NCBI RefSeq assembly: GCF_006345805.1
Contig: NC_043005.1
Location: forward strand, 64,790,001-64,854,000
Direction of reading: 5' to 3'
Length of the DNA: 64,000 bases
From: Octopus sinensis
Taxonomy: Eukaryota
Position numbers and translations under genes: made by a program. The notes beneath the pieces were generated by a model, which was not told the origin of the DNA, ran no database searches, and was given only the letters and a program-made list of their open reading frames with translations. Positions 11,361 through 64,000 of the stretch are shown piece by piece (position 1 is the stretch's first letter; every line of letters begins with the position of its first letter).

Positions 11361-12715
11361 ACAAATGAATAATTATTAATACAAATACTAAGATTATGAG
11401 AATGACTCCCTCCCAGGAGTAATGATCAGTGATTGAAATAGAGGTGGGGATGCTGCTCATACCTGAAAAGTTTCATAAGATTCCTAACCTCATCTACATG
11501 AGGAACAGGAAGCCCATGAGAGTTGTGGTAGAAGGCAGAAAGGCTTGCTGTTACTAATGTGGTAGTACCAACCATCAGGAAGATTTTTACCCTCAGACAA
11601 AGAAACTAAAAACCTGTTTGCTGCCAACATGACATCTACACTAATGACAACAGCATCAACACTAAAAGTGACAGTAAGAGCAGCATTTAGGGCAGTAGCA
11701 GTCACAGCAGAAGAAACTTAAACCATTGCCAGCTTACTGAAGGGGCTTACTGTCACTACCCTCAAAAGAAAACTCTTTACAAAGTTGTCTTCCTCTCCAA
11801 ACCAACATTGACACAAGTGATAAAAAACATATGTAACAATCAGCCTTCATCAGCTTCCTCCAATTTATCAGCAAAGGATGAGGAAGAGGAGAGGTGAGTC
11901 AAAATATGATGGTCATTAGCCCTTTAGCATTCCAACTAATCTATCAAATTTGATGTTTATAGATCCACATTATTTTGAATTACTCATGCATTGTCTTGTA
12001 ACTTTGAGCTTTCAATGATGTGAATATTTATTTTTAGAATGACATTGTAGTGTAGGGTCTTCCTTCAATAAGTAGATAAGAATTTTCCTGCAGACATATA
12101 AGTGCAGAGAATTTTCAATAAGCACACTTTGAGGGTCTCCTTCATCTGTGCACCAAATAGAATGCAAGTTTTAGTAAATAAGCCAAACACATAAGCAACT
12201 TGCTCGTGCAGAGGTAATGCCTCATGCACACTAAAAAAGTGGGGTGAATAGCTGCCACTTGAATGCTGACATTGGAGGACAGCGACTAGACAGGATGAAT
12301 CTGATGAACTTAAGAGTCAGCTTTGTTTTGTTTCATCCATGAGTTCCATTCTAGCTTTTCATAACATTACTGAGGTCCAAGCTACACTGTTCCATTCAAT
12401 TATGTCCAATGATTGTTAATTTACATTTCTACCGTTGGATGGTTCTTCAACAAGAAACTTGTTTGAAAATCATGAATTGACTGTTATGAGACAAAGTTTA
12501 TAATACTGTATAAAGAATATACACATTTTCTTGCCTAATATATGAATGCCTGTTGTTTTCTTACTTATGAAAACATCACACAACTAAACAGACGTATATA
12601 TATAAGTACACATATATGCATGTACATACATATGTGAATACATATGTATATTGCCTATGTTATTTTTATGTTTGGATTTCCTATGTAATACTGTATTCAA
12701 ATAAATTCAAATTAT

Positions 12716-12722
12716 AGTAGTG

Positions 12723-12780
<58 letters not shown>

Positions 12781-12918
12781 CAGCAGCAGCAGTGGATATA
12801 GTTGTAGGAGTAACAACATTGATAGTAGTAGTAGTAGTAGTAGTAGTAGCAGCTGTTGTGGATATAGTTGCACAAGTAACAACATTGATGATAGTGATGA
12901 TAGTAGTAGTAGTAGTAG
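12716..12918. repeat. Compound (TAG)n microsatellite with an internal duplicated spacer
   Basis: (tag)n blocks separated twice by gtggatatagttg.a..agtaacaacattgat; starts 18 bp from the dynein exon donor. Confidence 0.95.
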
Positions 12919-12935
12919 AATGAGAAAGCACATAC

Positions 12936-13117
12936 TTTTGCCGATCCCATATTTTGTATTCATCCTCCAACAAGTAAGCCTTGCATGTCGATATCAACTG
13001 GTTAGTTATTTTAACAAACAATGATGTCATCCTTTCAGAGGTATTGAAATATTGGGAATTACAGTAAATCATCTGTATTGCATTCATAAGACTGGATATG
13101 TGGTCGGCAATTCTATT
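12936..13117 (-). CDS. DNAH5: Axonemal dynein heavy chain exon
   Basis: Acceptor ctttcattccag and donor AAAA|gtatgt, phase 0 to 2. Encodes NRIADHISSLMNAIQMIYCNSQYFNTSERMTSLFVKITNQLISTCKAYLLEDEYKIWDRQ; the YxNTSExxTSLFVKxTNQ motif is typical of DNAH5/8. Confidence 0.95.
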
Positions 13118-13420
13118 CTGGAATGAAAGAAATATTATTAGAAAAAAGAATAGCAGACAAGCTAGATGGGACACCTGATGACACACAGGTATTTCTTTAT
13201 CACATCTAACTTCAATAGGCAAAAATAATCTAACTCACATCCACAGGTTTACAATTCAGTGCATTAGTCATAAATGTGTCAAATAAATCACCCAGCCCAA
13301 CTTCTGTAACTATGATAACAAATAATTGAACAAAGTGGCCAATGAAATGAGAAATCTGTCGCAAAACACTATATATACCCTTAGGCAATCACAAGAATAT
13401 ATATCAGTTTATATAGATAA

Positions 13421-20569: not shown

Positions 20570-22600
20570 ATAAATGAAGGTCTTGCAAATTTTGCCTGCA
20601 AGTTAAAGGTTGGCATGAGGAAGATGGTACAAACTGCCTGTTTTTTCACCCAAGATTCCGCCAAAACTACAGGGGCCTTAAGGAGAAATACTTCCCTGAG
20701 GAAAGGCACCAATCACTTCCATAGAAAAAAACATACAAATGCAGTGCATCTTCAGATTTTATATACAAGGCTGCAGCTGAGCAAGTCTTTTTTGCGCATG
20801 GTGCAAAAGGTTGTGCAGCAGCTGACCTGGCTACATCAAGCACAGACAAGAAACCTTGCCCACCACTGTGCAAGACCACCACAATCAAGAGACACAGGAT
20901 GGCTTTCCCTAATGCCTGCACAGCTGTCATGCAAATATTTTTCTAAATAGTAGAGGCCTGTTGCATCATGACAACAAAAGCAAAATATTTTTCCTAAGAG
21001 GCCCTGCAGCATGCAATCAAGCCCTATGCATAGCACTCATAGAAACTCATCTGGGCCCTGATATAGAGGATGCAGAAGTACATGTACTAAAATATACCAT
21101 TCTGCAAACAGACAGAAGAGAATGGAGACATGGTGGAGTTACTGTATACATCCATGAAGATCTCACACCCCAGATCTTCCTGTCATACTCAAATTCTGTA
21201 TGTGACACTCTAATCGTATACATAAGACAGCACAATATAGTCATATGCAATACATATCACCCACCTGATGCTCCAAAACACATAAGCAAGTTTGAAGATT
21301 GCCTCACAAGAATTAAAGAAATCCTCATGAAACTGGAAGACCATGTGAACATATTTCTTGTGGGTGATTTCAACTTCCCCAATGTCAAATGGCCTGAAGG
21401 CCTCATGATCTCAGAAATGACTCATTGCAAACAAGCACAGGTGGAGTCCCTGTGCAACATCACCAATGCCCTATTCATGGGGCAAGTTGTACTCAGACCA
21501 ACTAGGGAGATTAACATTTTGTATCTCTGCTTCACAAACAATATGGACATCGTTCATGATGTGAAAGTGATGCCAACATTAGTTTCAGATCACAACATAA
21601 TAGAGCTGTCTATGTATGGACCAAATGTAGCCAGAGACACACAGCCTAAAGGAAGCAGCCAAAATCTTTCCAATCTGAATTTCCTTAAAGCAAACTGGAA
21701 ATCGATACAAAAAGAGATCCTCAACAGAACTGGCCAAAATGTCCCTTCACACCAGACATTGGCATGAAACTAGAATATTTCATGTCTGTTATGCAAACCA
21801 CATGTCAGAAATATGTCCCAGAGCACAAGGCCAACAGAAAAGGAACAAGATTCCAATGGAAAGGAAGATCCTCATGAGATGACGGACAAAGGTCACTTCA
21901 ACCAACAATTCAAAAAGTAGTGAAAGGTCCTGCCTAAAAAACAACACTGATAGAGATTAAAAAAGCATGCAACAATCCTATGTGAGGGAGAGAGCAGACA
22001 AAGAAGCCTGGGTTATAAAAAACATTAAGTCAAATCCAAAAACCTTTTTTCATTATGCTAAAAAACAGCCTCAGTACACTGCAAAATAGGACCCCTCTTC
22101 AAAAAGGATGGCTCCCTCACAGATAGTCCAACCAGGATCAGTGAGGTACTAAATGACCAGTTCAAAAGAGTATTTACCACCCCATTGGAACACAGACAAG
22201 TGAATGAACCAGTGGATTTCTTTGCTGCCTCTCCTATAATCAGCGAGGCAGTTATGATGGATTACATCGACATTAGCGAAGAAGATATACTACTGGCCAT
22301 AGATGAGGTAGATGCAAACTCAACTGCTGGTCCTGATGGTTTCCCAGCAATCCTTCTCAAATCGTGTAAGCATGTCTTGGCGAAACCTCTACAGATTCTC
22401 TTCCTGAGCTTTCTTGCAAATCACAGGCTGCCAAGCAAACTGAAGGAGGGGATAATATAGCCAATCCATAAAGGAGGAAGCAGAGCAGACCCAAAAACTA
22501 TAGGCCTATCTCTCTGACTTCACACATCAGCAAAGTCATGGAACGGATAGTCAGAGGGAAACTAATTGCATTCCTTGAAGAAAACAACTTACCAAGTAAT
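20570..22600 (+). mobile_element. CR1-like LINE fragment (ORF1 remnant, AP endonuclease, start of RT)
   Basis: ORF 20961-21767 has IETHL, GGVTVYI, GDFNFP.V.W, PTRE.NILYLCFTN, SDHN. Downstream: AGPDGFPAILLKSC, YRPISLTSH.SKVMERIV. Truncated at ~22600. Confidence 0.88.
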
Positions 22601-28575: not shown

Positions 28576-29263
28576 ACTTATTCAAATGTGCAGCACACAA
28601 TTATTCAAAGGTCCAGCACACAGTTATTCAAGGATCCTACGCACAGTTATTCAAAGGTCCAGCACACAGTTTTTCAAAGGTCCAGCACACAGTTATTCAA
28701 AGGTCCAGCACACAGTTTTTCAAAGGTCCAGCACACAGTTATTCAAATGTCCAGCACACAGTTATTCAAAGGTCCAGCACACACTTATTCAAGGATCCTA
28801 TGCACAGTTATTCAAAGGTCCAGCACACAGTTATTCAAAGGTCCAGCACACAGTTTTTCAAAGGTCCAGCACACAGTTATTCAAAGGTCCAGCACACAGT
28901 TATTCAAAGGTTCAGCACACAGGTATTCAAAGGTCCAGCACACAGTTATTCAAAGGTCCAGCACACAGTTATTCAAAGGTTCAGCACACAGTTATTCAAA
29001 GGTCCAGCACACAGTTATTCAAAGGTCCAGCACACAGTTATTCAAAGGTCCAGCACACAGTTATTCAAAGGTCCAGCACACAGTTATTCAAAGGTCCAGC
29101 ACACAGTTATTCAAAGGTCCAGCACACAGTTATTAAAAAGTCCAGCACACAGTTATTCAAAGGTCCAGCACACAGTTATTAAAAGGTCCAGCACACAGTT
29201 ATTCAAAGGTCCAGCACACAGTTATTCAAAGATCAAGCACACAGTTATTCAAATATCCAACAC
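28576..29263. repeat. 23-bp minisatellite, ~30 copies (unit AGTTATTCAAAGGTCCAGCACAC)
   Basis: Direct head-to-tail units without spacers; variant units recur at multiples of 23 bp. Explains the three overlapping plus-strand ORFs. Confidence 0.97.
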
Positions 29264-33519: not shown

Positions 33520-34262
33520 TAGGCACAGGAGTGGCTGTGTGGTAAGTAGCTTGCTTACCAACCACATGGTCATGATTTCAGTCCCACTGCATGGCACCTT
33601 GGTCTTCTACTATAGCCTCGGGCCAACCAAAGCCTTGTGAGTGGATTTGGTAGATGGAAACTGGAAGAAGCTCATTGTATATCATCATCATCATCATCAT
33701 CATTTAGCGTCCGCTTTCCATGCTAGCATGGGTTGGACGGTTCAACTGGGGTCTGGGAAGCCTGAAGGCTGCACCAGGCCCAGTCTGATCTGGCAGTGTT
33801 TCTACGGCTGGATGCCCTTCCTAACGCCAACCACTCTGTGAGTGTAGTGGGTGCTTTTTACGTGCCATCCGCACAGGTGCCAGACGGGGCTGGCAAACGG
33901 CCACGGATGGATGGTGCTTTTTACGTGCCACCGGTACGGGGGCCAGGCAAGGCTGGCAACAGTCGCGATCGGATGGTGCTTTTTACGTGCCACCGGCGTA
34001 TATATATATATATTTGTGTATATATATATGTATATATGTGTATGTATATGTGTGTGTGTCAGTGTTTGTCCCCACCAACATCACTTGACAACTGATGCTG
34101 GTGTGTTTACGTCCCCGCAACTTAGCAGTTCGGCAAAAGAGACCGATAGAATAAGTACTAGGCTTACAAAGAATAAGCTCTGGGGTCAATTTGTTCGACT
34201 AAAGGTGGTACTCCAGCATGGCTGCAGTCAAATGACTGAAACAAGTAAAAGAGAGAAAAAAG
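33520..34262 (+). mobile_element. SINE family A interrupted by a family B SINE (33668-34000)
   Basis: Family A head 33520-33668 and tail 34040-34262, with a (CAT)n-tailed element between them. Confidence 0.8.
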
Positions 34263-41369: not shown

Positions 41370-43920
41370 GAATTCCCAGTAATGGAGCAATCCACTTAGA
41401 GTAGTCTGAGGTAAATCCCACACAAAAATCCCAGATTGCTCTGCTATCTCCAAGGCATGGGAAAGTGCCCTCTCCTAGTTTCTTTCCTCCTGCTTAGAAA
41501 AGCATCTTCAGAGTAGATCCATTCAGTCTCACCAGTCTTGCCACTTTCGACCACCTTTTGATAAACACACTAGAAGGCAGCATCTCCTTCTCTACCCTCA
41601 CCTTCCTCTTCAAATGATATTTGAAGAAATTGATGATAGGAATGTGCCTGTCTTCAAACCTTTCAGGCGGATCCACTACACAGCCTCTTTTGCCACAGCT
41701 GCTAAGCAGAGAAAGATCTGCCTTCTTTCTCTACTAAAGGAAGGTGGTGTGTCAATCCTCACTATACACTCTGTAGACAGCTGAGTTTGTCTTACACATG
41801 ACAACAGCTGTTCTACTCAATCCCATGACACTCTAATGCACGGACACTGAATTGTTGCGTGCAGGATGGTTTCATCCCCTTGCAGGCATCATGAGCAGGT
41901 TCAACTGTTGGTAATTCCATGCCCGAAGACCTTATCTCAAATGAGCAATGCCCCTCTGTAGCACTGCTACAGAGTTTCAGAAATTGTCCATGATCATCAA
42001 GCTCCTCTGGAAGAAACTACTCAGACTGTTCTCGTCGATGCCTAGATTCGATCCTAGGCCATCATCACTCATACCATCAACTAGCCCCCTATAGAATTCT
42101 TGGGTTGTTTTCCGGCTAATGGGTTTTGGCAGCTGGTACAGTGCAGTGAGCACCTGGCAACATTCTAGACACCAAACACCCAACCTTACTCTACATTTAA
42201 CTCATGACTGCAGCTCTGTCAATGAGATGAGCCGTGGAAAGACATGTCGCATGAAGCCATTCAATTTGACAAACAAGCAAATGCCACTATATATTGTGGT
42301 GATCCAGCCTCTGAAGATGGAACCAAAATTGACAGCTTTTAGGACAGATACCAGATAGCAATAGTCCACCCTGTCAAAATCTTTGGACTGGTTCAAATTG
42401 ACCAGTGCCCACCACCAACCCATTTATTCCTGAAATTGTCGGAGATAGATCTACCGGGAATTACACAGGTTTGTGCATCCTTAACCATACTACCGACAAC
42501 AAGCATCAGCCTCTTGGTGAGCACCTTAGCTAAAAATCTTTAACTCAGTGTTGAGTAGAGTTATGGGCCTCAAGTTTTCAATCACATCCTCCTTATTTGG
42601 ATCTTTTCTCAGCAATGTCACCACTCCCTGACTCACACAACAGGGAATGCTTCCAGTCTGTTGCCAGGAGCAGTAGACAGCTGCTAAAACTGGCACAAAC
42701 ATGTCTGGCATGTGGGCATATAGTTTATCAGGCAGACCATCCAGTCCTGGTGATTTGCGCCCCACACAGTGGCCCAGTACATCTTCCACTTTCTCCACTG
42801 AAATCAGCTTCTCGCAGCACTCAGTATCCTTGTCCGATAGATGTAGCATACCCTCAAGGTAAGCCCCAAAGCCCACAGTGTCAAGAATGCCACTCCTCGA
42901 AAAGAGGTTGGCAAAATGCTGCCAAAACACTGCACTCGTCTGTTTGGAATTGGAGCGCATATGACCACTGCAGTCCATCACAGAGCAAATATTAGATTTG
43001 TTTCCATGCTGTGTCTCTACTACTTGGGCCCAACCAACAGCTTTTGAGCTTTCAAGTTTCAAGATATGCACACTAGCTTGGACAATACAGCCTTCATGTT
43101 TTACACCAAAGTAAAGGTTGAGTACCATTCTTGCCACTTGCACATCATTTGCAATCCCACTTTTATGTGCCTCTTCTAAGTTACTAACTAGTTTATTTTC
43201 TATTTTGTTGTTTTCTAAAGCAATCTCCATGCTAAAAATAACTGAGACCCACCACCTGTTGCAGATGATGGCTTCCGTAAATTCCTGTTTAAATTGTCAA
43301 CTAATCTGGTCCCTGAAATCTTTCCTCGCCAGGAAGGACATGTTCATCTTGCAGTAACTAGGTCCTAGTTTGATTGTTTTTCCTAGGTTGACTGTTAAGG
43401 TCCCAAATTTGTGATCTGAATAGCCAATGACCTGAAAATGTAGACAACTTATACTCTGTCTATCTGCAAGCCTAATAAAAACCCTATCTAGGTATGACCA
43501 GGATGACCCACTGTGATTTGATCGAGTCCACACTGGTGTATTTGGGTGATTGAGGTTATGCAGTTGGAAATGCCTGAAGTTAGCAAGGCTTTTGCACTGC
43601 ACTCCCCTATCCACTGCTTCTACATAATCTTTGCTTGTGTCTAAGATCCCATACCAGTTGCCCACTAACACTAATGACTAAGATGTCCCTAGGAAATTCT
43701 CTAGACATCTAAAGAAATCTGGCCGTCCAGCTCCTTTTGGGGCATAGACTGTCACAAGTCTGAAAGCTACTCTGTTGCCTTCTTCGCTGCTTGTGTCCAG
43801 GCCTTTCCAAAATAGAAACATGATGCCATTTGATCCAGGCCAACCAGAGGAAGTATAAACCTTGTAAATAATGGTAACTGTAATTGTCAACATCAACACT
43901 TTAACCACCTGTGGAACAAC
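41370..43920 (-). mobile_element. L1/Tx1-clade LINE, degraded and internally deleted
   Basis: Endonuclease fragments (FRLVTVYAP, SYLDRVF, YSDHK, GPSYCKMN.SFL) and RT fragments (KSPGLDGLP, RPITLLNTELKIF, LVNLNQSKDFDRVD) in successive minus-strand ORFs. Confidence 0.88.
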
Positions 43921-56284: not shown

Positions 56285-57154
56285 TGTGTTTCTGTGTGTG
56301 TGTGTGTGTGTATGTGTGTGTGTATAAGAGAGAACGTGCGAGTGAGTAAGTGTGTATGCATGCGTATGTGAGAGTGCCTTAGAGAGAAAGTATATGTGAG
56401 AGTGTGTGTGTGTGAGGGAGAGTGTGTGTGTGTATGAGAGAGAGAGTGTGTATATGTGTATAAGAGAGAAAGTGTGTGTGAGAGTATGTATGGGAGTGTG
56501 TGTGTGGGAGAGAGAGAGGAAGCAAATGTGTGGGCGTGCATGCGTGTGCATGTGTGTGTGTATGTATAAAAAAGAGAGTGTGTGTGTGATAGTGTGTGTG
56601 CATGTGTGCACGAGAATGATGTATATCAACAAGTAAAATAAAATCAACAAAAAACAAAGATAAACAGTTATTACACACTAAGGTACATGAGATATTTCAT
56701 TTGAACTCAAGTTAAATACACATTCCCTTGACTCTCATTCTGTCAACAATGCAATGAACCATCACTTTAGCTGTTAAAAAACAATAACTATTGATGCTAT
56801 GGTTCACCAAATCTAATATAAAATTAAAATAAATAACAATTCAATCAGTTATAATTGTATATCTGTTACATAAATACAATGCTCTCACATAGAATAGATG
56901 CAGCAATGTAAATGAGAAGCTTCCTATAAGACATTTTATAATATTTTTATTTGCAAAAAGTTTACGTGTAGCTATGGATATATAGGTATAGCATTTGCTT
57001 TGCAATTTGTGATGCAGTTCCAGGTTTAGTTCTAATGTGCAGCACCTTGTTGAGTGTTTTCTAACATAGATATGTGTTGACCAACAACATTTAAGAGGAA
57101 TTAGATAGATGGAAACTATATGAAGGCCCATTATATATATATATATATATATAT

Positions 57155-58980
57155 AGGGGTAAAATAAGAAAAATCAACGAAAATGCATATTGTAGATATA
57201 AAAAGGCTATTTATGACAGGTAGTGACAAATATATACATTTAGAGTATTACTAGTCAAAAAGGTCATTATTATTGATGATTATAAGAAGTTAATAATAAT
57301 AATAATAATAATAAGGTAAGCTACTGAAAGGAACCAACTGGTTTTCGCTTTAGCTATTCATCGTTTGAACAACACTGGTTAGTAAACGGTGTCAGGTCTT
57401 ATAGTTCTCGAGAAAAGAGATTATTTGTAAGGGAGATAAGTAGTTCTGGATCATATGTATAAGGGAGGTAAGTAGTTCAGGAATTAGAAATGTGAGTGAT
57501 GTAGAAAGTGTATAGGGTTTAGTGGTTTAAATTAAAGAGTTAGTGGAGTTCTGTATTGAGGTGTGTGTTCACATTTAGTTGGGGGAGAAATTTGTTGATG
57601 AAAAATGACTCTTTATTCAACCTTTGTTGCATTGTGGTATTCTGTGAGCATTGGTAAAAGGGAAATATTTGGAAATTAGGATTAAGATTCCTGGCACATC
57701 TTTCTATGAGTTCACTCACCTTTAACTGTCTATATTGTGGGTGGCGGATTTGCTCTTTGTGAATGGTGATTCTTTGATGGAGCGAGATTCCTGTTTGTCC
57801 AATATAGAGTTTACCGCATCCTATGCATGTCATGACATAGATTACATTTGCCAAGGCGCAGGTGAAATTTGATTTGATCTTAAATATTTCTCCTTGTTTG
57901 AATTGGAATTCTGAACCCTCCAGAAGGTGGGGGCATGCTCCACATTTGGAACGTCCACATTTTGTCACTTTTGGCTCAGTAGTTAGTGGGTAAAGTCTAG
58001 CGCTGGTTAGTATTTTTTTCAGTGACTTCGGTTGCTTTTTGCTTTTTATAATTTTATATGAGCTTAAAATTTCGTTCATTGTTTTGTCTGCTGTGAGGAT
58101 GGGGAGGTTTTGGGGGATGATGTTGAAGGCTTCGTTATTTCTGGGGTTATGTGTGGAGATGTACGGGAGTATTTTTAAGTCTTGTTTAAGTATTACGGCT
58201 AGTTTTCCTTAATTTTTGTATATCTATTCCCTTAGCTCTTTTGATGCCTTCATTTACTTATGAGATTGGGTAGTGTCTTTTAGTTCGTGTAGATCTAATT
58301 TCAAGGAGTCTATGTTCACGAGTGTATGTATCGGAAACTATGGTGCAGATTCTTTTTGCTATGTTAAAGAGTATGTTGATTTTTATGTGTTTGGGGTGGC
58401 AGGAGTTAAATAATAGGTATTGTTTAGAGTTTGTGGGTTTATAAAAGATGTCTGTTTCTATGTGGTTGTTAACTATTCTAATTAAGATGTCTAGAAAAGG
58501 TAGTTGCTTACTGTTGTGTTCCATAGTAAATTGTATATTGCTGTGTATGTTGTTGAGCATTATTTTAAAATCAAGGAGTTGATCCATGCTATCTTGCCAA
58601 AGTATGAAGCAATCATCTAAATAACTCTTCCAGTTTTCCTTTAAGTAGTAATTGAAAGAGGCGCCATATTTTTCTAGTGATGATTGGTATAACTTAAGTT
58701 CGTGGTAACCCATTACGGGGTTTGCAATAACTGGAGCAGCTCTGGTCCCCATTGCAATTCCGCATTTCTATCGATAGTAATTAGTGTCGAACAAGAAATG
58801 TTTGTTCAACAGGACGAATTTCAGTGCTTCAATTATAAAATTGTGGTTAATTCGTCCTGGGATCTCTTCTGGGTGCTTTTCTAGCCAAAATGTGATTGCT
58901 TCTATACCATAGTCGTGTGGGATATTAGTGTGTAGATTCAATACATTGAAACACACCAGTAGAGTTCCGTCTTGGAAATT
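57155..58980 (-). mobile_element. Penelope-like element (RT plus GIY-YIG endonuclease), 5'-truncated and frameshifted
   Basis: RT motifs LHTNIPHD, MGTRAAPVIAN, YLDDCF, LPFLDI, YKPT..KQYL.F.SCHP. Endonuclease NVIYVMTC..CGKLYIGQT. Flanked by (TA)n at both ends. Confidence 0.93.
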
Positions 58981-59019
58981 GTATATATATATATATATAT
59001 ATATAGGAAATTGTAGCTG

Positions 59020-59845
59020 TGATACCAGTGCCGGTGGCACGTAAGAGAACTATTTGAACGTGGCCGTTGCCAGCGCCGCCCCGACTGGCCTCCGTGCCGG
59101 TGGCACGTAAAAAGCACCATCCAATTGTGGCCGTTGCCAGCCTCGTCTGACCCCCATGCCGGTGGCACGTAAAAAGCACCATCCGAACGTGACCGTTTGC
59201 CAGCCTCGTCTGGCACCTGTGCAGGTGGCACGTAAAAAGCACCCACTGCGCTCAGGAGTGGTTGGCATTAGGAAGGGCATCCAGCAGTAGAAACACTGCC
59301 AGATGAGACTGGGCCTGGCGCAGCCTTCTGGCTTCCCAGACCCCAGTTGAACCGTCCAACCCATGCTAGCATAGAAAACGGACGTTAAACGATGATGATG
59401 ATGATGATATATCATCTTCAATGCAAGTGAAATTGAAATCAAAATCAAATTCGATGACTGGCATCCGTATAGTGGAGAACTGAGAGCACCATCCGAGCAC
59501 TGATCGTTGCCAGAGCAGCTAACTGACTTCCATGCCAGTGGCACGTAAAAAGCACCATTCGAGCGTGATTGTTACCAGCGTCACTTTACTGGCATTTGTG
59601 CCAGTGGCATGTGAAAAAACATTCGAGCGACGTTGCTGCCAGTGCCACTGGACTGGCTCCTGTGCAGGTGGCACGTAAAAGCACCCACTACACACTTGGA
59701 GTGGTTGGTGTTAGAAAGGGCATCTAGCTGTAGAAACCCTGCCAGATCAGATTGAAGCCTGGTGCAGCCATCTGGTTCGCCAGTCCTCAGTCAAATCATC
59801 CAACCCATGCTACCATGGAAAGCGGATGTTAAACGATGATTATGA
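59020..59845 (+). mobile_element. Two tandem SINE family B copies at the truncated 5' end of the Penelope element
   Basis: Each ends in catgct..catggaaagcggacgttaaacgatgatg; several ~58-bp internal units containing gtgccggtggcacgtaaaaagcacc. Confidence 0.82.
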
Positions 59846-60476
59846 TATATATATATATATATGTATTATATATATATATATATATATACAAACTTTTTAC
59901 TCTTTCATTTTCTCTCTTTCTCTCTCTTATTCTTTCACCTCCTCTTCTCCCACTATTCTATTCTATTACTCTGTCACTCTCTCTCCCTCACTCCCCCTCC
60001 CTTGCTCACGTGGAGCCCACATGACCATCGGCCACCTTTCTTTCTTCTCCTAACTTGTGTTTCTTTTTCTCTCCATTGTAGCTGGAACAAGGAAGACATG
60101 TTCTTGTCTGTCTCCTGTCCAAGCTTAATTTACACGTTCGCCACCACAACCTCATTTAGGCTTAGCGGCCCTTCCTGTTTGTTTTCACTGTCCTGTTTGT
60201 GTTACCAATTTTGACCCTCCATTTGCTTTGTGGGAGTAACTGTTTTATTGAAAGCATATATTGTTGTTAAATTCTCAAAATACAGGAGTAGAAAAACAGC
60301 CAACAACTGATGAAGGGTCGTTCTTTATGTTGTTTGTTTTGTTTTCCATTTGTGTCTATATTTGTTCGAGAAAATAGTTCATATTCCATGTACTCATACT
60401 CCGTATTTTTTTGTTGTACACGTTTCGTGACGTTCTCTGCCCACATACGCATATATATATACATATATATACATAT

Positions 60477-60531
<55 letters not shown>

Positions 60532-61139
60532 TGTATGTACATATACATATGTATATATGCATATATATATTTATTATTTATATTGTTATATGATTGAACG
60601 CCATGCATACTGTTCCCACTAAGTTTATATATATATACGCACACACACGTGAAGGCATATGGCTTAGTGGTTTGGGTGTGGCAATTATGATTGTGAGATC
60701 GTTGGTTGGATTCTAAGACCAGGCGTTGGGTTGTGTTCTTGAGCAAATTACTTCATTTCACATTGTTCTGCAATCACTTTGACATCTGACATGTGGCACT
60801 CAATGCACCTGTGCAGGTAATGTCGATCTGATGGAGGGAGTGAGCTTATGTCCACGCAAACATTTGATCGTTATAAACAAATCATCTGTGAGTTTGTTTG
60901 GTAAGAAATTGTCGATCCCTCATATGTCATCTAACAACAGGAGAGTTCATTGTTATTATATATATGTACATCAAACGACACACCAATGATCAGGTGCTGA
61001 GGTTTCGAGTTATCTTGACTGATTTCAGCTTTCTCAAAAAACTCTAGTGATCCGAAGCCATATGGATGGACAGATTTCGAAACCTTCTCAGCCTGAGCTA
61101 CTTTGGTAGCTAACAACATCTTCAGCCATCATGGAGTAC

Positions 61140-61480
61140 CACCTTGAAGGGATGGAGTTGAATAAATCGACCCCACGACTTATAGTTTAAAGCCTAGTAC
61201 CGAGTCTATTAGTCTCTTTTGCTGAACTGCTAAGTTATGGGGATGAAACACACCAACAACAATTGTCAAGCAGTAGGAGGGGACAAACACAGACCCCTCC
61301 ACACACACATACAATATATACGACAGGCTTCTTTCAGTTTCCATCTCCCTGATCCACTCACAAGGCTTTGGCCAGCCTGAGGCTATAGTAGAAGACACTT
61401 GCCCTTGGTGACACACACTAGGACTGAACCCAGAACCATGTGCTTGGGAAGCAAGCTTCTTACCATACAACTACACCTAT
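61140..61480 (-). mobile_element. SINE family A
   Basis: Reverse-complement homolog of 1148-1560. Confidence 0.78.
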
Positions 61481-62463
61481 ATGTGTGCGCGCGTGTGTGT
61501 GTGTGTGTGTGTGACTTTTAAGTTATCACTACAGAGCATGGTCGTAATTTATAGTGTTGGCTCTAAATTCTATAGAATATGTGTTGAGATAACTTAAAAG
61601 TGATTAAATCGCTCTGTTAACACAAAGAGATAGGACACAGCATTGATTTATAAACTATTAATACACCTAGTTGTATTACATGGTTGTAAAATGAAATATG
61701 GCATCACTACACTACCAGGAATAAATAATATATACGTATGTATATAAATATGTGTATATGTGTATGTGTGTGTGTACGTATGTGTGTATGTATGTATGTG
61801 TGTTTGTATGTATGTATGCATGTATGTGTGCGCATATGTATGTATGTGTGTGTGTATGTATGTACGTATGTATCTATGAATGAGTGAATGAATGAGAATA
61901 AGGAAAATGAAAGTGAAAATAAATCAAAATTTTGCTAAGTTTTAATTTGCAGAATATTGTCCTCTCTGATTCTTAACACCTAGAAATTCCAAGAAATTTT
62001 CACCACTTCAATATGGCTGTTCCATAGGAACTGATGATACTACTGCTTTTAATCCCCTGGGGGCGCCTCCTCTAGCTCATTGTCGATACAATCTGCACCC
62101 AATATATATTGTAAGCAGAGGAGTGAACCCCTACCATTTTCCAGCAGACAACGGGATCCCCAGACCGGCCAGTTTTGAAATATTTCAGCGAAGGACACCT
62201 GTCCACCAGAGATAGCAGTAATCCACTACAACTTGCAATCATCATCGTTATTTGGCAGCCACTATCAATGCTGGCATGGGTTGGACGGTTTGATCAGGGC
62301 TGGTAAGCTGAGGGGCTATGCCAGATTCCTGTCTGATTTGGCATGGTTTTTATGGCTGGATGCCCTTCCTAACGTCAACCACTACAAGAGTGTAGTGGGT
62401 GCTTTTATGTACCACTGGCAAGGATACCAGCTGCATGACACCAATATCTGCCACACCTCACCT

Positions 62464-62547
62464 ATGATTTTAGTGGCAAACAGTCACACACACACACTAT
62501 TCTTTTACATACATACGTATGTACATATGTACATACGTATGTAAAAG

Positions 62548-62583
<36 letters not shown>

Positions 62584-62603
62584 CTGTTTGCCACTGAAAT
62601 CAT
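62464..62603. repeat. Palindrome with a zero-spacer centre at 62526/62527
   Basis: atgattttagtggcaaacagtc(ac)n tattcttttacatac...gtacat|atgtac...gtatgtaaaagaata (tg)n gactgtttgccactgaaatcat. Confidence 0.9.
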
Positions 62604-62605
62604 TC

Positions 62606-62681
62606 ATGTGGCATATATAATGTCCTTATGAAAGATAAAAAACATGCTAAGATAGTGTTGTTGAGTCTAGCTGTGTGTGTG

Positions 62682-62759
<78 letters not shown>

Positions 62760-62774
62760 CATACATACATACAA

Positions 62775-62810
<36 letters not shown>

Positions 62811-62898
62811 TATATATACACACACACAGCTAGATTCAACAACACTATCTTGGCATGTCTTTTATCTTTCATAAGGATATTACATATATCCAAATATG
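62606..62898. repeat. Inverted repeat (~70-80 bp arms) around a (TA)n/(CATA)n microsatellite
   Basis: aatgtccttatgaaagataaaaaacatgctaagatagtgttgttgagtctagctgtgtg vs cacacagctagattcaacaacactatcttggcatgtcttttatctttcataaggatatt, about 4 mismatches. Confidence 0.92.
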
Positions 62899-63197
62899 TT
62901 ATGTGACATTCACTCCATCTAGTCTTCTGTAACAATAAATATTTTTTTGATGTATTTTTTTAATGTATTCATTTTTCGTACCAAGAACAGTAATATGCAA
63001 TTGAGTGAATAATAATTGAATTAATTTCTCATTTTCCTACTATGTTATTTACATGTTAATATTACTGTTCGAAACAATTGTATGCATGGATTAAATTCTT
63101 TCTAAACTTTTAACATCTTTTCTTCTCCATCTTTGATTGTTTGTTGAACTTCTAAAGGATTTGTGGTCTATAAAAGCTCATAACACACCTTCTATCC

Positions 63198-63334
<137 letters not shown>

Positions 63335-63337
<3 letters not shown>

Positions 63338-64000
63338 ATTAATCAATATAGAGTGGCAAAAAATTTTGTAGAATTTTTTTGCCACCAGCGGCCTAGTGGG
63401 AAAAAAATTAATTAGTCATAGACCATTTATAAGTTCAACATCACAATCAAGGAACGGCCATAATAGGCCATTCACCCACTAGAAATAACAGCCAAAGCTT
63501 CAACCGCAAAATAACATCAATTCCGCAAACCAGGAGAAAATTAAAAAAACATTTACCCTGTAATTTCTTATACGATGCACCGTTTCATCTATTGTTTAAT
63601 GGTAAACTAACCTGATTAAATTAAATCAAGCCAATCTTCCATAGGCCCTTAGATTCGTCAGTAAGAAATAGCCAGATCGGAACAGATATTTTCACGAGGC
63701 ACTTCTGTCCCTGCCTCGGCAATATCTGACCTAAAATTTTCAAATCATCGCACTCACGCCAAATTTATCGGCAGCAAATAAATATAAGCCGCCGATTCCA
63801 TTACGGAATTAACCAGAAAATTCATAATTAATCAATATAGAGTGGCAAAAAATTTTGTAGAATTTTTTTTTTTTTTTTGCCACCAGCGGCCTAGTGGGAA
63901 AAAAATTAAATAGTCATAGACCATTTATAAGTTCAACATCACAATCAAGGAACGGCCATAATAGGCCATTCACCCACTAGAAATAACAGCCAAAGCTTCA
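63335..64000 (-). mobile_element. Tandem-repeat retrozyme-like element (unit ~489-498 bp) running off the window end
   Basis: 63335-63823 is repeated from 63824 with only a poly-T length change (T7 vs T16) and about one substitution. The unit contains an intact hammerhead ribozyme and multiple hairpins, and begins at a (TA)n tract. Confidence 0.8.
63563..63669 (-). ncRNA. Type I hammerhead ribozyme, fully intact
   Basis: Minus strand: AUUUCUUA-CUGACGA-AUCUA-[insert]-UAGAU-GAAA-CGGUGCAUCG-UA-UAAGAAAU. Perfect 8-bp stem I, 5-bp stem II, stem III with UGCA loop, canonical core, GUA cleavage triplet (cut between 63571 and 63570). Confidence 0.92.

What the first reader, a model, noticed from the sequence alone, without database searches (positions are those of the whole stretch)
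63335..64000. Candidate cephalopod retrozyme: young ~490-nt tandem repeat with an intact hammerhead ribozyme in the unit
Seen: 63335-63823 is repeated head-to-tail from 63824 to the window edge, nearly identically (T7 vs T16, about one substitution), so amplification is recent. The unit holds a complete hammerhead on the minus strand (63563-63669), has no ORF, and is rich in self-complementary segments: GTGGCAAAAAATT/AATTTTTTTGCCAC, CTAGTGGG/CCCACTAG, GGCC-ATAATA-GGCC, CAGATATT/AATATCTG enclosing CGAGGCA/TGCCTCG, ATCGGC/GCCGAT, ATTCC/GGAAT. Known: non-LTR retrozymes of cnidarians, trematodes, bivalves and amphibians are non-coding tandem repeats of a few hundred nt with one type I hammerhead per unit, processed into monomeric circular RNAs. 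Inference: a minus-strand transcript would self-cleave at successive hammerheads into ~489-498 nt monomers that can circularise. I am not aware of such an element described in octopus, but I cannot search.
Basis: partly seen in the sequence, partly recalled or inferred. Interest (0 to 1): 0.93.

Follow-up and report, generated by a model that had tools for sequence, protein, structure and literature searches.

The report
Candidate hammerhead retrozyme repeat, atypical ribozyme
A 489-base non-coding repeat at the window edge carries a complete, non-random hammerhead ribozyme core and looks like a "retrozyme", a known kind of ribozyme-bearing mobile element, but only 1.36 units are visible and self-cleavage, copy number and host species could not be checked.

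Summary
63335-63823 (489 nt) repeats head-to-tail from 63824 to the window edge, differing by T7/T16 and one substitution.

The minus strand 63669->63563 has a full type I hammerhead core: 8-bp helix I, CUGACGA, helix II, GAAA, helix III, cleavage after GUA. It is the only such motif in 64 kb. None of 4000 dinucleotide shuffles matched it in all three helices, an estimated ~1e-5 per window.

Features not used in the search also fit:
- The 68-nt helix II folds into one long hairpin (z -5.1).
- Helix III plus its UGCA loop is a 12-nt palindrome, the dimer-forming hallmark of metazoan and Penelope hammerheads.
- The unit is non-coding, 36% G+C and strongly self-paired.
- Its end abuts a (TA)n microsatellite. 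A decayed Penelope-like element 4.4 kb away also sits in (TA)n.

Caveats:
- No Rfam hammerhead model matches, even at E<=10.
- The conserved G10.1-C11.1 pair is A-U.
- Unit 2's ribozyme lies beyond the window.
- No second copy could be fetched, so there is no covariation evidence.
- The octopus attribution could not be verified.

Most likely this is a non-LTR retrozyme, or the closely related terminal repeat of a Penelope-like element. That makes it a new member of a known kind, of moderate interest.

The parts
63335..63823 (-). Repeat unit 1 (489 nt), complete and non-coding. The candidate retrozyme monomer; the sense strand is the minus strand.
   Evidence: for the repeat. G+C is 36.4%. Minus-strand RNA MFE is -145.7 kcal/mol with z -5.0, against -104.6 for the plus strand. 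No protein similarity in any frame.
63824..64000 (-). Repeat unit 2, cut by the window edge (177 nt visible). It has T16 instead of T7 and one substitution. Its hammerhead would lie beyond the window.
63563..63669 (-). Type I hammerhead motif (107 nt). Predicted cleavage is on the minus-strand RNA between A17 (63571) and U1.1 (63570).
   Evidence: for the motif. for the shuffles. The hammerhead fold is -26.7 kcal/mol against an MFE of -28.8. No Rfam hammerhead hit.
63655..63661 (-). Core box CUGACGA (C3-A9).
   Evidence: direct reading.
63587..63654 (-). Helix II: a 5-bp closing stem AUCUA/UAGAU (A10.1-U11.1) that carries a long imperfect hairpin arm, 68 nt in all.
   Evidence: The arm alone folds at -21.9 kcal/mol, z -5.1, with 0 of 1000 shuffles as stable. 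The same arm appears.
63572..63586 (-). GAAA box (63586-63583) and helix III ACGG-UGCA-UCGU. This is a 12-nt quasi-palindrome that can form an extended intermolecular helix III (double hammerhead).
   Evidence: The monomer hairpin is -0.2 kcal/mol; the self-duplex of 12 bp is -17.5 kcal/mol.
63353..63385 (-). 12-13-bp A/U-rich hairpin GTGGCAAAAAA...TTTTTTTGCCAC near the array end. One arm holds the variable T-run (T7 vs T16).
63191..63334 (.). (TCTA)n then (TA)n microsatellite, directly abutting the end of the array. Putative insertion target.
57156..58981 (-). Context, not part of the repeat. A 5'-truncated, frameshifted Penelope-like element (RT with YLDD, CX4CxxC linker, GIY-YIG endonuclease) with (TA)n on both sides. 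It represents the class of putative autonomous partner.
   Evidence: PF01541, E 2e-6; 263 PLE homologues, best 59% identity.

Best explanation
The 489-nt unit is a monomer of a non-LTR retrozyme, a non-coding, non-autonomous retroelement of the Penelope-like-element (PLE) sphere.

Inferred mechanism:
1. The minus strand of the tandem array is transcribed.
2. In multimeric transcripts each unit forms a type I hammerhead from an 8-bp helix I, the CUGACGA/GAAA core and a long helix II arm.
3. The monomeric helix III is weak, but its sequence is palindromic. Two neighbouring hammerheads therefore probably pair into a double hammerhead and cleave after GUA (63571|63570).
4. Cleavage releases monomers of about 489-498 nt with 5'-OH and 2',3'-cyclic phosphate ends.
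5. These monomers are ligated into highly base-paired circular RNA.
6. The circle is copied by a PLE reverse transcriptase into tandem cDNA.
7. The cDNA is inserted at a (TA)n microsatellite nicked by the PLE GIY-YIG endonuclease.

What is shown here: the repeat, the motif and its improbability, the folds, the lack of coding capacity, the (TA)n junction, and the PLE fragment in (TA)n. Inferred only: transcription, cleavage, circularisation and mobilisation.
For: - Head-to-tail repeat, nearly identical.
- Complete hammerhead core with type I topology, unique in the 64 kb. 0 of 4000 shuffles match all three helices, about 1e-5 expected per window.
- Features outside the search descriptor also fit. 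The helix II insert is itself a very stable hairpin (z -5.1). Helix III plus its loop is a perfect 12-nt quasi-palindrome; Cervera & de la Pena 2014 (PMC4209133) list this as a hallmark of metazoan and PLE hammerheads.
- The hammerhead fold lies only 2.1 kcal/mol above the MFE.
- The unit is non-coding, 36.4% G+C, and strongly structured on the hammerhead strand (z -5.0). These match the published description of low G+C and highly self-paired units (PMC7229834). The published consensus length range is 51-972 bp (bioRxiv 10.64898/2026.07.22.740005).
- Only one polarity carries a ribozyme.
- A PLE fragment with the CX4CxxC linker lies 4.4 kb away with (TA)n on both sides. The array also ends at (TA)n. 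The (TA)n bias of PLEs and its proposed link to the CX2-5CxxC linker are described in PMC8557442.
Against: - No Rfam hammerhead model matches, even at E<=10 on 146 nt.
- The 10.1-11.1 pair is A-U. G-C there is described as the most conserved pair after 15.1-16.1 (PMC3088659; PMC4209133).
- Helix II (68 nt) and helix I (8 bp uninterrupted) differ from the canonical 4-bp and 6-bp metazoan architecture, and no loop-loop tertiary contact can be recognised.
- Only 1.36 units are visible, so a second hammerhead is not shown.
- There is no other copy in the window or in any searchable collection. There is therefore no conservation or covariation evidence and no proof of mobility.
- The unit shares no sequence with the nearby PLE fragment.
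- Related PLE contigs showed no hammerhead.
Confidence: 0.55

Rival explanations
1. The repeat is the pseudo-LTR (terminal partial tandem) of a Penelope-like element whose ORF lies beyond the right edge, on the minus strand. Unit 2 would be the 3' non-coding end of a full copy. Unit 1 would be a 5'-truncated second copy. The hammerhead would be the PLE's own pLTR ribozyme.
For: - PLEs typically insert as partial tandems that form pLTRs, and these carry type I hammerheads (PMC4209133; PMC8557442).
- PLEs are present in this genome and target (TA)n.
- The array's minus-strand 3' end abuts (TA)n.
- Retrozymes and pLTRs are reported to be phylogenetically intertwined.
Against: - No frame of the unit resembles a PLE protein C-terminus.
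- The unit has no similarity to the 3' region of the PLE fragment in the window.
- Helix III here is 4 bp with a tetraloop, unlike the 'minimal' PLE hammerheads.
- Nothing beyond 64000 can be seen, so this is undecided rather than contradicted.
Confidence: 0.2
2. It is a relic: a satellite-like or locally duplicated sequence descended from a hammerhead-bearing element, whose ribozyme no longer cleaves. Causes would be the A10.1-U11.1 pair, an expanded helix II and loss of tertiary contacts. No circular RNA is made.
For: - It deviates from the conserved G10.1-C11.1 pair.
- All Rfam models miss it.
- The nearby PLE is old and broken.
- Monomer derivatives and short arrays are common.
Against: - All 11 strictly conserved core positions, the A15.1-U16.1 pair and H17 are intact.
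- All three helices are perfect, with the A-U at 10.1-11.1 still a pair.
- The two units differ by <1%, which points to recent duplication.
- Mussel retrozyme hammerheads also lack the archetypal loop contacts, yet they cleave and give abundant circles.
Confidence: 0.17
3. The hammerhead-like motif is a chance match inside an ordinary local tandem duplication next to a microsatellite (replication slippage or an assembly artefact), with no ribozyme ancestry.
For: - Simple hammerhead descriptors do hit by chance in large genomes (PMC3088659). At about 1e-5 per 64 kb, roughly one such match could occur in a multi-gigabase genome.
- No homologues were found.
- There is no Rfam support.
Against: - For chance to explain it, the motif must coincide with a few-hundred-nt tandem repeat. 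The expected number inside one 489-nt unit is about 1e-7, scaled.
- The features not selected for (a structured helix II arm at z -5.1, a palindromic helix III and loop, the (TA)n junction, a PLE nearby) all point the same way.
- The two copies differ by a T-run length and a substitution, which argues against a simple assembly duplication.
Confidence: 0.08

Closest known systems
Metazoan non-LTR retrozymes (Cervera & de la Pena 2020, PMC7229834): coral, mussel and axolotl tandem repeats with type I hammerheads, expressed as circular RNAs
   Same: - Head-to-tail non-coding repeat of a few hundred nt.
- Low G+C.
- One type I hammerhead on one strand.
- Highly self-paired RNA.
- Coexists with PLEs.
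- Like the mussel ribozymes, it lacks the archetypal loop 1-loop 2 contacts.
- The palindromic loop 3 suggests dimeric cleavage, as in newt and axolotl.
   Different: - The unit (489 nt) is longer than the 170-400 nt typical of invertebrates, though inside the 51-972 bp range.
- Helix II is 68 nt instead of about 4 bp plus a loop.
- Helix I is 8 bp uninterrupted.
- The 10.1-11.1 pair is A-U.
- Rfam does not detect it.
- Array length, copy number and expression are unknown.
Hammerheads in the pseudo-LTRs of Penelope-like elements (Cervera & de la Pena 2014, PMC4209133; Craig et al. 2021, PMC8557442)
   Same: - Type I topology.
- A helix II larger than usual.
- Palindromic helix III and loop 3.
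- Tandem arrangement.
- A (TA)n microsatellite at the insertion site.
- A C-terminal-EN PLE with the CX4CxxC linker lies in the same window.
   Different: - No RT/EN ORF lies between or next to the visible units.
- Helix III is 4 bp rather than absent or 1 bp.
- There is no bulged nucleotide between A9 and 10.1.
- The G10.1-C11.1 pair typical of PLE hammerheads is absent.
- There is no sequence similarity to the PLE fragment in the window.
Rfam Hammerhead_1 (RF00163) hits annotated in cephalopod genomes (235 in Architeuthis dux, PMC6962438)
   Same: Type I hammerhead motifs in a (possibly) cephalopod genome.
   Different: This motif does not reach any Rfam hammerhead model, even at E<=10. It would not be among such automated counts.

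Membership tests
Hammerhead ribozyme (type I) | Conserved core C3 U4 G5 A6 N7 G8 A9 and G12 A13 A14 | tested here: met
   CUGACGA at 63661-63655 and GAA(A) at 63586-63583 on the minus strand.
Hammerhead ribozyme (type I) | A15.1-U16.1 pair and a cleavage-site triplet ending in H17 (not G) | tested here: met
   A 63583 pairs with U 63572. The triplet is GUA, with A17 at 63571.
Hammerhead ribozyme (type I) | Three helices around the core, with helix I open-ended (type I) | tested here: met
   Helix I is 8 bp, helix II is 5 bp plus an arm, helix III is 4 bp plus the UGCA loop. 0 of 4000 shuffles are as good.
Hammerhead ribozyme (type I) | Highly conserved G10.1-C11.1 pair at the base of helix II | tested here: not met
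   It is A-U here. It remains a Watson-Crick pair. Natural active exceptions such as U-U exist (PMC3088659), so this is a deviation and not an exclusion.
Hammerhead ribozyme (type I) | Match to a curated covariance model (Rfam hammerhead families) | tested here: not met
   No hammerhead family matches at the gathering score or at E<=10, even on 146 nt. The 68-nt helix II insert is the likely cause, but I could not test that.
Hammerhead ribozyme (type I) | Tertiary contact between helix I and helix II (loop-loop or pseudoknot) | tested here: inconclusive
   Internal loops exist after 8 bp of helix I and 5 bp of helix II, but no recognisable conserved contact. Mussel retrozyme hammerheads also lack the archetypal contacts.
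Hammerhead ribozyme (type I) | Self-cleavage; conservation and covariation among homologues | not testable with these tools
   No homologous copy was obtainable. This needs a bench assay.
Non-LTR retrozyme | Head-to-tail tandem repeat (dimer or more) of a short unit | tested here: inconclusive
   1.36 units are visible, with a seamless junction at 63823/63824. The rest lies beyond the window.
Non-LTR retrozyme | A type I hammerhead in every unit | tested here: inconclusive
   Present in unit 1. The expected position in unit 2 (about 64061-64167) is outside the window.
Non-LTR retrozyme | Non-coding, low G+C (<45-50%), no LTR/PBS/PPT | tested here: met
   The longest frame is 60 aa, with no protein similarity. 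G+C is 36.4%. PBS and PPT were not specifically searched for.
Non-LTR retrozyme | Highly self-paired RNA of the hammerhead polarity | tested here: met
   Minus strand -145.7 kcal/mol with z -5.0. As a circle, -139.1 kcal/mol with 58% of bases paired, against -99.2 and 47% for the plus strand.
Non-LTR retrozyme | Coexistence with autonomous Penelope-like elements in the genome | tested here: met
   A PLE fragment lies at 57156-58981. It is decayed, so an active partner is not shown.
Non-LTR retrozyme | Multi-copy, dispersed arrays; expression as monomeric linear and circular RNA | not testable with these tools
   The source genome and transcriptome are not in any searchable collection.
Penelope-like element pLTR | Direct repeats flanking an RT + GIY-YIG ORF | tested here: inconclusive
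   There is no ORF between the two visible units and no PLE-like coding remnant in the unit. An ORF beyond 64000 cannot be excluded.

The most novel reading that the evidence does not exclude
This is an active retrozyme family of a mollusc, possibly a cephalopod. Its hammerhead is a variant that current covariance models do not detect: an A-U at 10.1-11.1, a ~70-nt structured helix II arm, and a palindromic helix III that forces cleavage as a double hammerhead. It would produce ~0.5-kb circular RNAs mobilised by Neptune-type PLEs into (TA)n microsatellites. If so, retrozymes and genomic hammerheads are systematically under-counted in such genomes.
Probability: 0.3. Interest if true: 0.55.

Novelty: new member of a known kind. 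Interest (0 to 1): 0.4.

Why it matters
If confirmed, this would extend ribozyme-derived circular RNAs (non-LTR retrozymes) to another animal lineage.

It would also supply a hammerhead with a very long helix II and a non-canonical 10.1-11.1 pair, which Rfam-based annotation misses. That is a warning that genome-wide hammerhead and retrozyme counts are lower bounds.

The shared (TA)n insertion context with a CX4CxxC-type Penelope-like element gives a concrete, testable link between a retrozyme and its presumed autonomous partner.

It would not change the current picture of what retrozymes are.

Tried and rejected
1. Rfam. I searched the whole window at gathering score, then 701 nt and 146 nt at E<=10. 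No hammerhead or other ribozyme family matched. The weak hits (psbM 3'UTR, FtrA, U5 and others) are A/U-hairpin noise.
2. Extending the locus. Exact look-ups of two window ORFs in the assembly index found nothing on record.
3. Fetching other copies of the unit.
   - A six-frame pseudo-protein of the unit against 5.8 billion proteins gave no hit.
   - DNA patterns spanning the ribozyme found nothing in metagenome contigs, viral contigs or prokaryotic genome contigs.
4. Hammerheads in relatives of the window's PLE. Two metagenome contigs (L001, L002) and an Argonauta hians locus (L003) had no hammerhead and no similarity to the unit.
5. Identifying the species. The PLE protein's best hit is 59% identity and unnamed; the named hits are molluscs at <=48%. 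The dynein DHC_N1 exon's best hit is 68%. The species appears to be absent from the collections.
6. A hammerhead at the 3' end of the PLE fragment in the window: none.
7. tRNA/SINE origin of the unit: no tRNA-like gene in 59-64 kb.
8. A ribozyme on the plus strand of the unit: none.

Full report
**Observation.** The stretch 63335-63823 (489 nt) is repeated head-to-tail from 63824 to the end of the window. Over the 177 visible bases of the second copy, the only differences are a T-run (T7 vs T16) and one substitution (T63412 vs A). Only 1.36 units are inside the window, which is why TRF does not list the repeat. No other copy, even a diverged one, exists elsewhere in the 64 kb. The left end of the array directly abuts a (TCTA)n-(TA)n microsatellite at 63191-63334.

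**The hammerhead.** The minus strand from 63669 to 63563 reads as follows:
- AUUUCUUA (helix I)
- CUGACGA
- AUCUA...UAGAU (helix II, 68 nt)
- GAAA
- ACGG-UGCA-UCGU (helix III)
- A17, then the cleavage site
- UAAGAAAU (helix I)

All strictly conserved core positions, the A15.1-U16.1 pair and a non-G at position 17 are present, in type I topology. My own descriptor scan finds this as the only hit in the window on either strand, even at relaxed thresholds.

In 4000 dinucleotide-preserving shuffles of the window, none had all three helices as long as observed. Two had 17 or more helix base pairs in total. The product of the marginal tail frequencies gives about 1e-5 expected per 64 kb. That is about one chance match in a multi-gigabase genome, but about 1e-7 inside a given 489-nt repeat unit.

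**Independent features.** Three properties that were not part of the search point the same way.
- The 68-nt helix II is not a random spacer. It folds into one long imperfect hairpin at -21.9 kcal/mol, z -5.1, with 0 of 1000 shuffles as stable. The same hairpin appears in the folds of the motif and of the whole unit.
- Helix III plus its UGCA loop is a 12-nt quasi-palindrome. The monomeric hairpin is marginal (-0.2 kcal/mol), whereas two copies can form a 12-bp duplex (-17.5 kcal/mol). A short helix III with a palindromic loop is the published hallmark of metazoan type I and Penelope-element hammerheads. Such hammerheads cleave as dimers in multimeric transcripts and stay silent in the monomer (PMC4209133; PMC7229834).
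- The hammerhead secondary structure is within 2.1 kcal/mol of the MFE of the 107-nt segment.

**The unit as a whole.**
- It has no coding capacity. The longest stop-to-stop frame in the circularised unit is 60 aa. A concatenation of all frames found no protein at E<=0.001.
- Its G+C content is 36.4%.
- The RNA of hammerhead polarity folds much better than its complement: -145.7 vs -104.6 kcal/mol linear, and -139.1 vs -99.2 as circles. The z-score is -5.0, and 58% of bases are paired.
- No ribozyme is detectable on the plus strand.

**Context.** On the same (minus) strand, 4.4 kb away, lies a 5'-truncated and frameshifted Penelope-like element at about 58981->57156. It has an RT (YLDD), a linker with an invariant CX4CxxC motif, and a GIY-YIG endonuclease (Pfam PF01541, E 2e-6). 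It has 263 homologues. The best reaches 59% identity on unnamed metagenome contigs, and the named ones are from Argonauta hians (48%), Mytilus and Saccostrea.

This fragment has (TA)n on both sides, so it sits inside a (TA)n microsatellite. Craig et al. report a microsatellite insertion bias for PLEs, with (TA)n the preferred target of Naiads. They note that the CX2-5CxxC linker was proposed to mediate this bias in Neptune-type elements (PMC8557442). The hammerhead array ends at the same kind of site.

The unit shares no sequence with this PLE fragment. The fragment has no hammerhead of its own.

**What speaks against an active, canonical ribozyme.**
- No Rfam hammerhead family matches, at the gathering score or at E<=10 on as little as 146 nt.
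- The base pair 10.1-11.1 is A-U. G-C there is described as the most conserved pair after 15.1-16.1 (PMC3088659; PMC4209133), although active natural exceptions exist.
- Helix I (8 bp uninterrupted) and helix II (68 nt) differ from the canonical 6-bp and 4-bp metazoan design.
- No loop-loop contact can be recognised. The mussel retrozyme hammerheads also lack these contacts, and they cleave more slowly.

**What could not be done.** The source genome appears to be absent from every searchable collection.
- Exact look-ups of window ORFs failed.
- The unit's frames found nothing.
- Ribozyme-spanning DNA patterns found nothing in metagenome, viral or prokaryotic genome contigs.
- A dynein DHC_N1 exon in the window finds nothing above 68% identity.

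As a result there is no second copy of the hammerhead region, no covariation test, no copy number and no extension past 64000. The 'octopus' attribution cannot be verified; a mollusc is plausible. Loci carrying the closest PLE relatives (L001-L003) hold neither hammerheads nor similarity to the unit.

**Interpretation.**
- Most likely (0.55) this is a non-LTR retrozyme. The minus-strand transcript of the array would self-cleave, probably through double hammerheads, into ~489-498-nt monomers that circularise and serve as templates for a PLE reverse transcriptase. Integration would occur at (TA)n. Only the sequence features are shown; every step of the life cycle is inferred from the published behaviour of such elements (PMC7229834).
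- The main rival (0.2) is that the two units are the terminal partial tandem (pLTR) of a PLE lying beyond the window edge. A recent preprint argues that retrozymes derive from pLTRs, so the two readings are close relatives.
- An inactive relic gets 0.17.
- Pure chance or artefact gets 0.08.

**Novelty and interest.** Retrozymes are well described in cnidarians, bivalves, amphibians and many other animals, and their unit lengths span 51-972 bp. The held literature contains no cephalopod retrozyme. However, 235 Rfam Hammerhead_1 hits were reported in the giant squid genome (PMC6962438).

This is therefore a new member of a known kind. The twist is a hammerhead variant that escapes standard models. 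Interest is moderate (0.4): a credible, cheaply testable candidate, but not a new principle.

Noticed in passing
window 57156-58981 (-): A decayed, 5'-truncated Penelope-like element. The RT (YLDD) and the GIY-YIG endonuclease are in different frames, and the conserved CX4CxxC linker is KCGRSKCGAC. It has (TA)n on both sides (57134-57155 and 58982-59005). The best relatives reach only 59% identity.
   Followed up: yes
window ~12900-13100 (-), within ORF 12707-13222: An exon-like stretch encoding a dynein heavy chain N-terminal region (hits carry PF08385, DHC_N1; best 68% identity). The window probably lies within or next to a large dynein heavy chain gene on the minus strand.
   Followed up: partly
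window 28578-29253: A 23-nt minisatellite with 29.4 copies at 92% match. It is open in all three forward frames and so produces three overlapping ORFs of 189-248 aa. This is almost certainly not coding.
   Followed up: no
window 20961-21767 (+) and 42526-43671 (-): LINE-type retrotransposon fragments. The first is an endonuclease-reverse transcriptase domain (PF14529, E 5.5e-8). The second is a pair of ORFs that look like a LINE endonuclease/RT N-terminus, but they have no Pfam hit.
   Followed up: partly
window 59043-59703, 33850-33997, and an inverted partner at 62314-62420: A ~63-nt repeated module containing GGTGGCACGTAAAAAGCACC. It occurs in short tandem runs and dispersed or inverted copies, including 59663-59769 vs 62314-62420 at 79% complementarity. 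It looks like a SINE or other short interspersed repeat, but was not identified.
   Followed up: no
window 60425-62830 and 63191-63334: The 4 kb between the PLE fragment and the hammerhead repeat is dense in microsatellites: (TA)n, (TG)n, (GTAT)n, (TACA)n and (TCTA)n. Long (TA)-rich quasi-inverted repeats are present, for example 62613-62726 vs 62774-62887.
   Followed up: no
L001 (ERZ23490197 scaffold_3534) and L002 (ERZ23499376 scaffold_9080): The closest relatives of the window's PLE protein sit on short contigs labelled as metagenome assemblies. Some other PLE homologues are annotated as bacterial proteins, for example Candidatus Thiodiazotropha MAGs and a Solemya gill symbiont. This is probably host (mollusc) DNA binned into symbiont genomes.
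   Followed up: no
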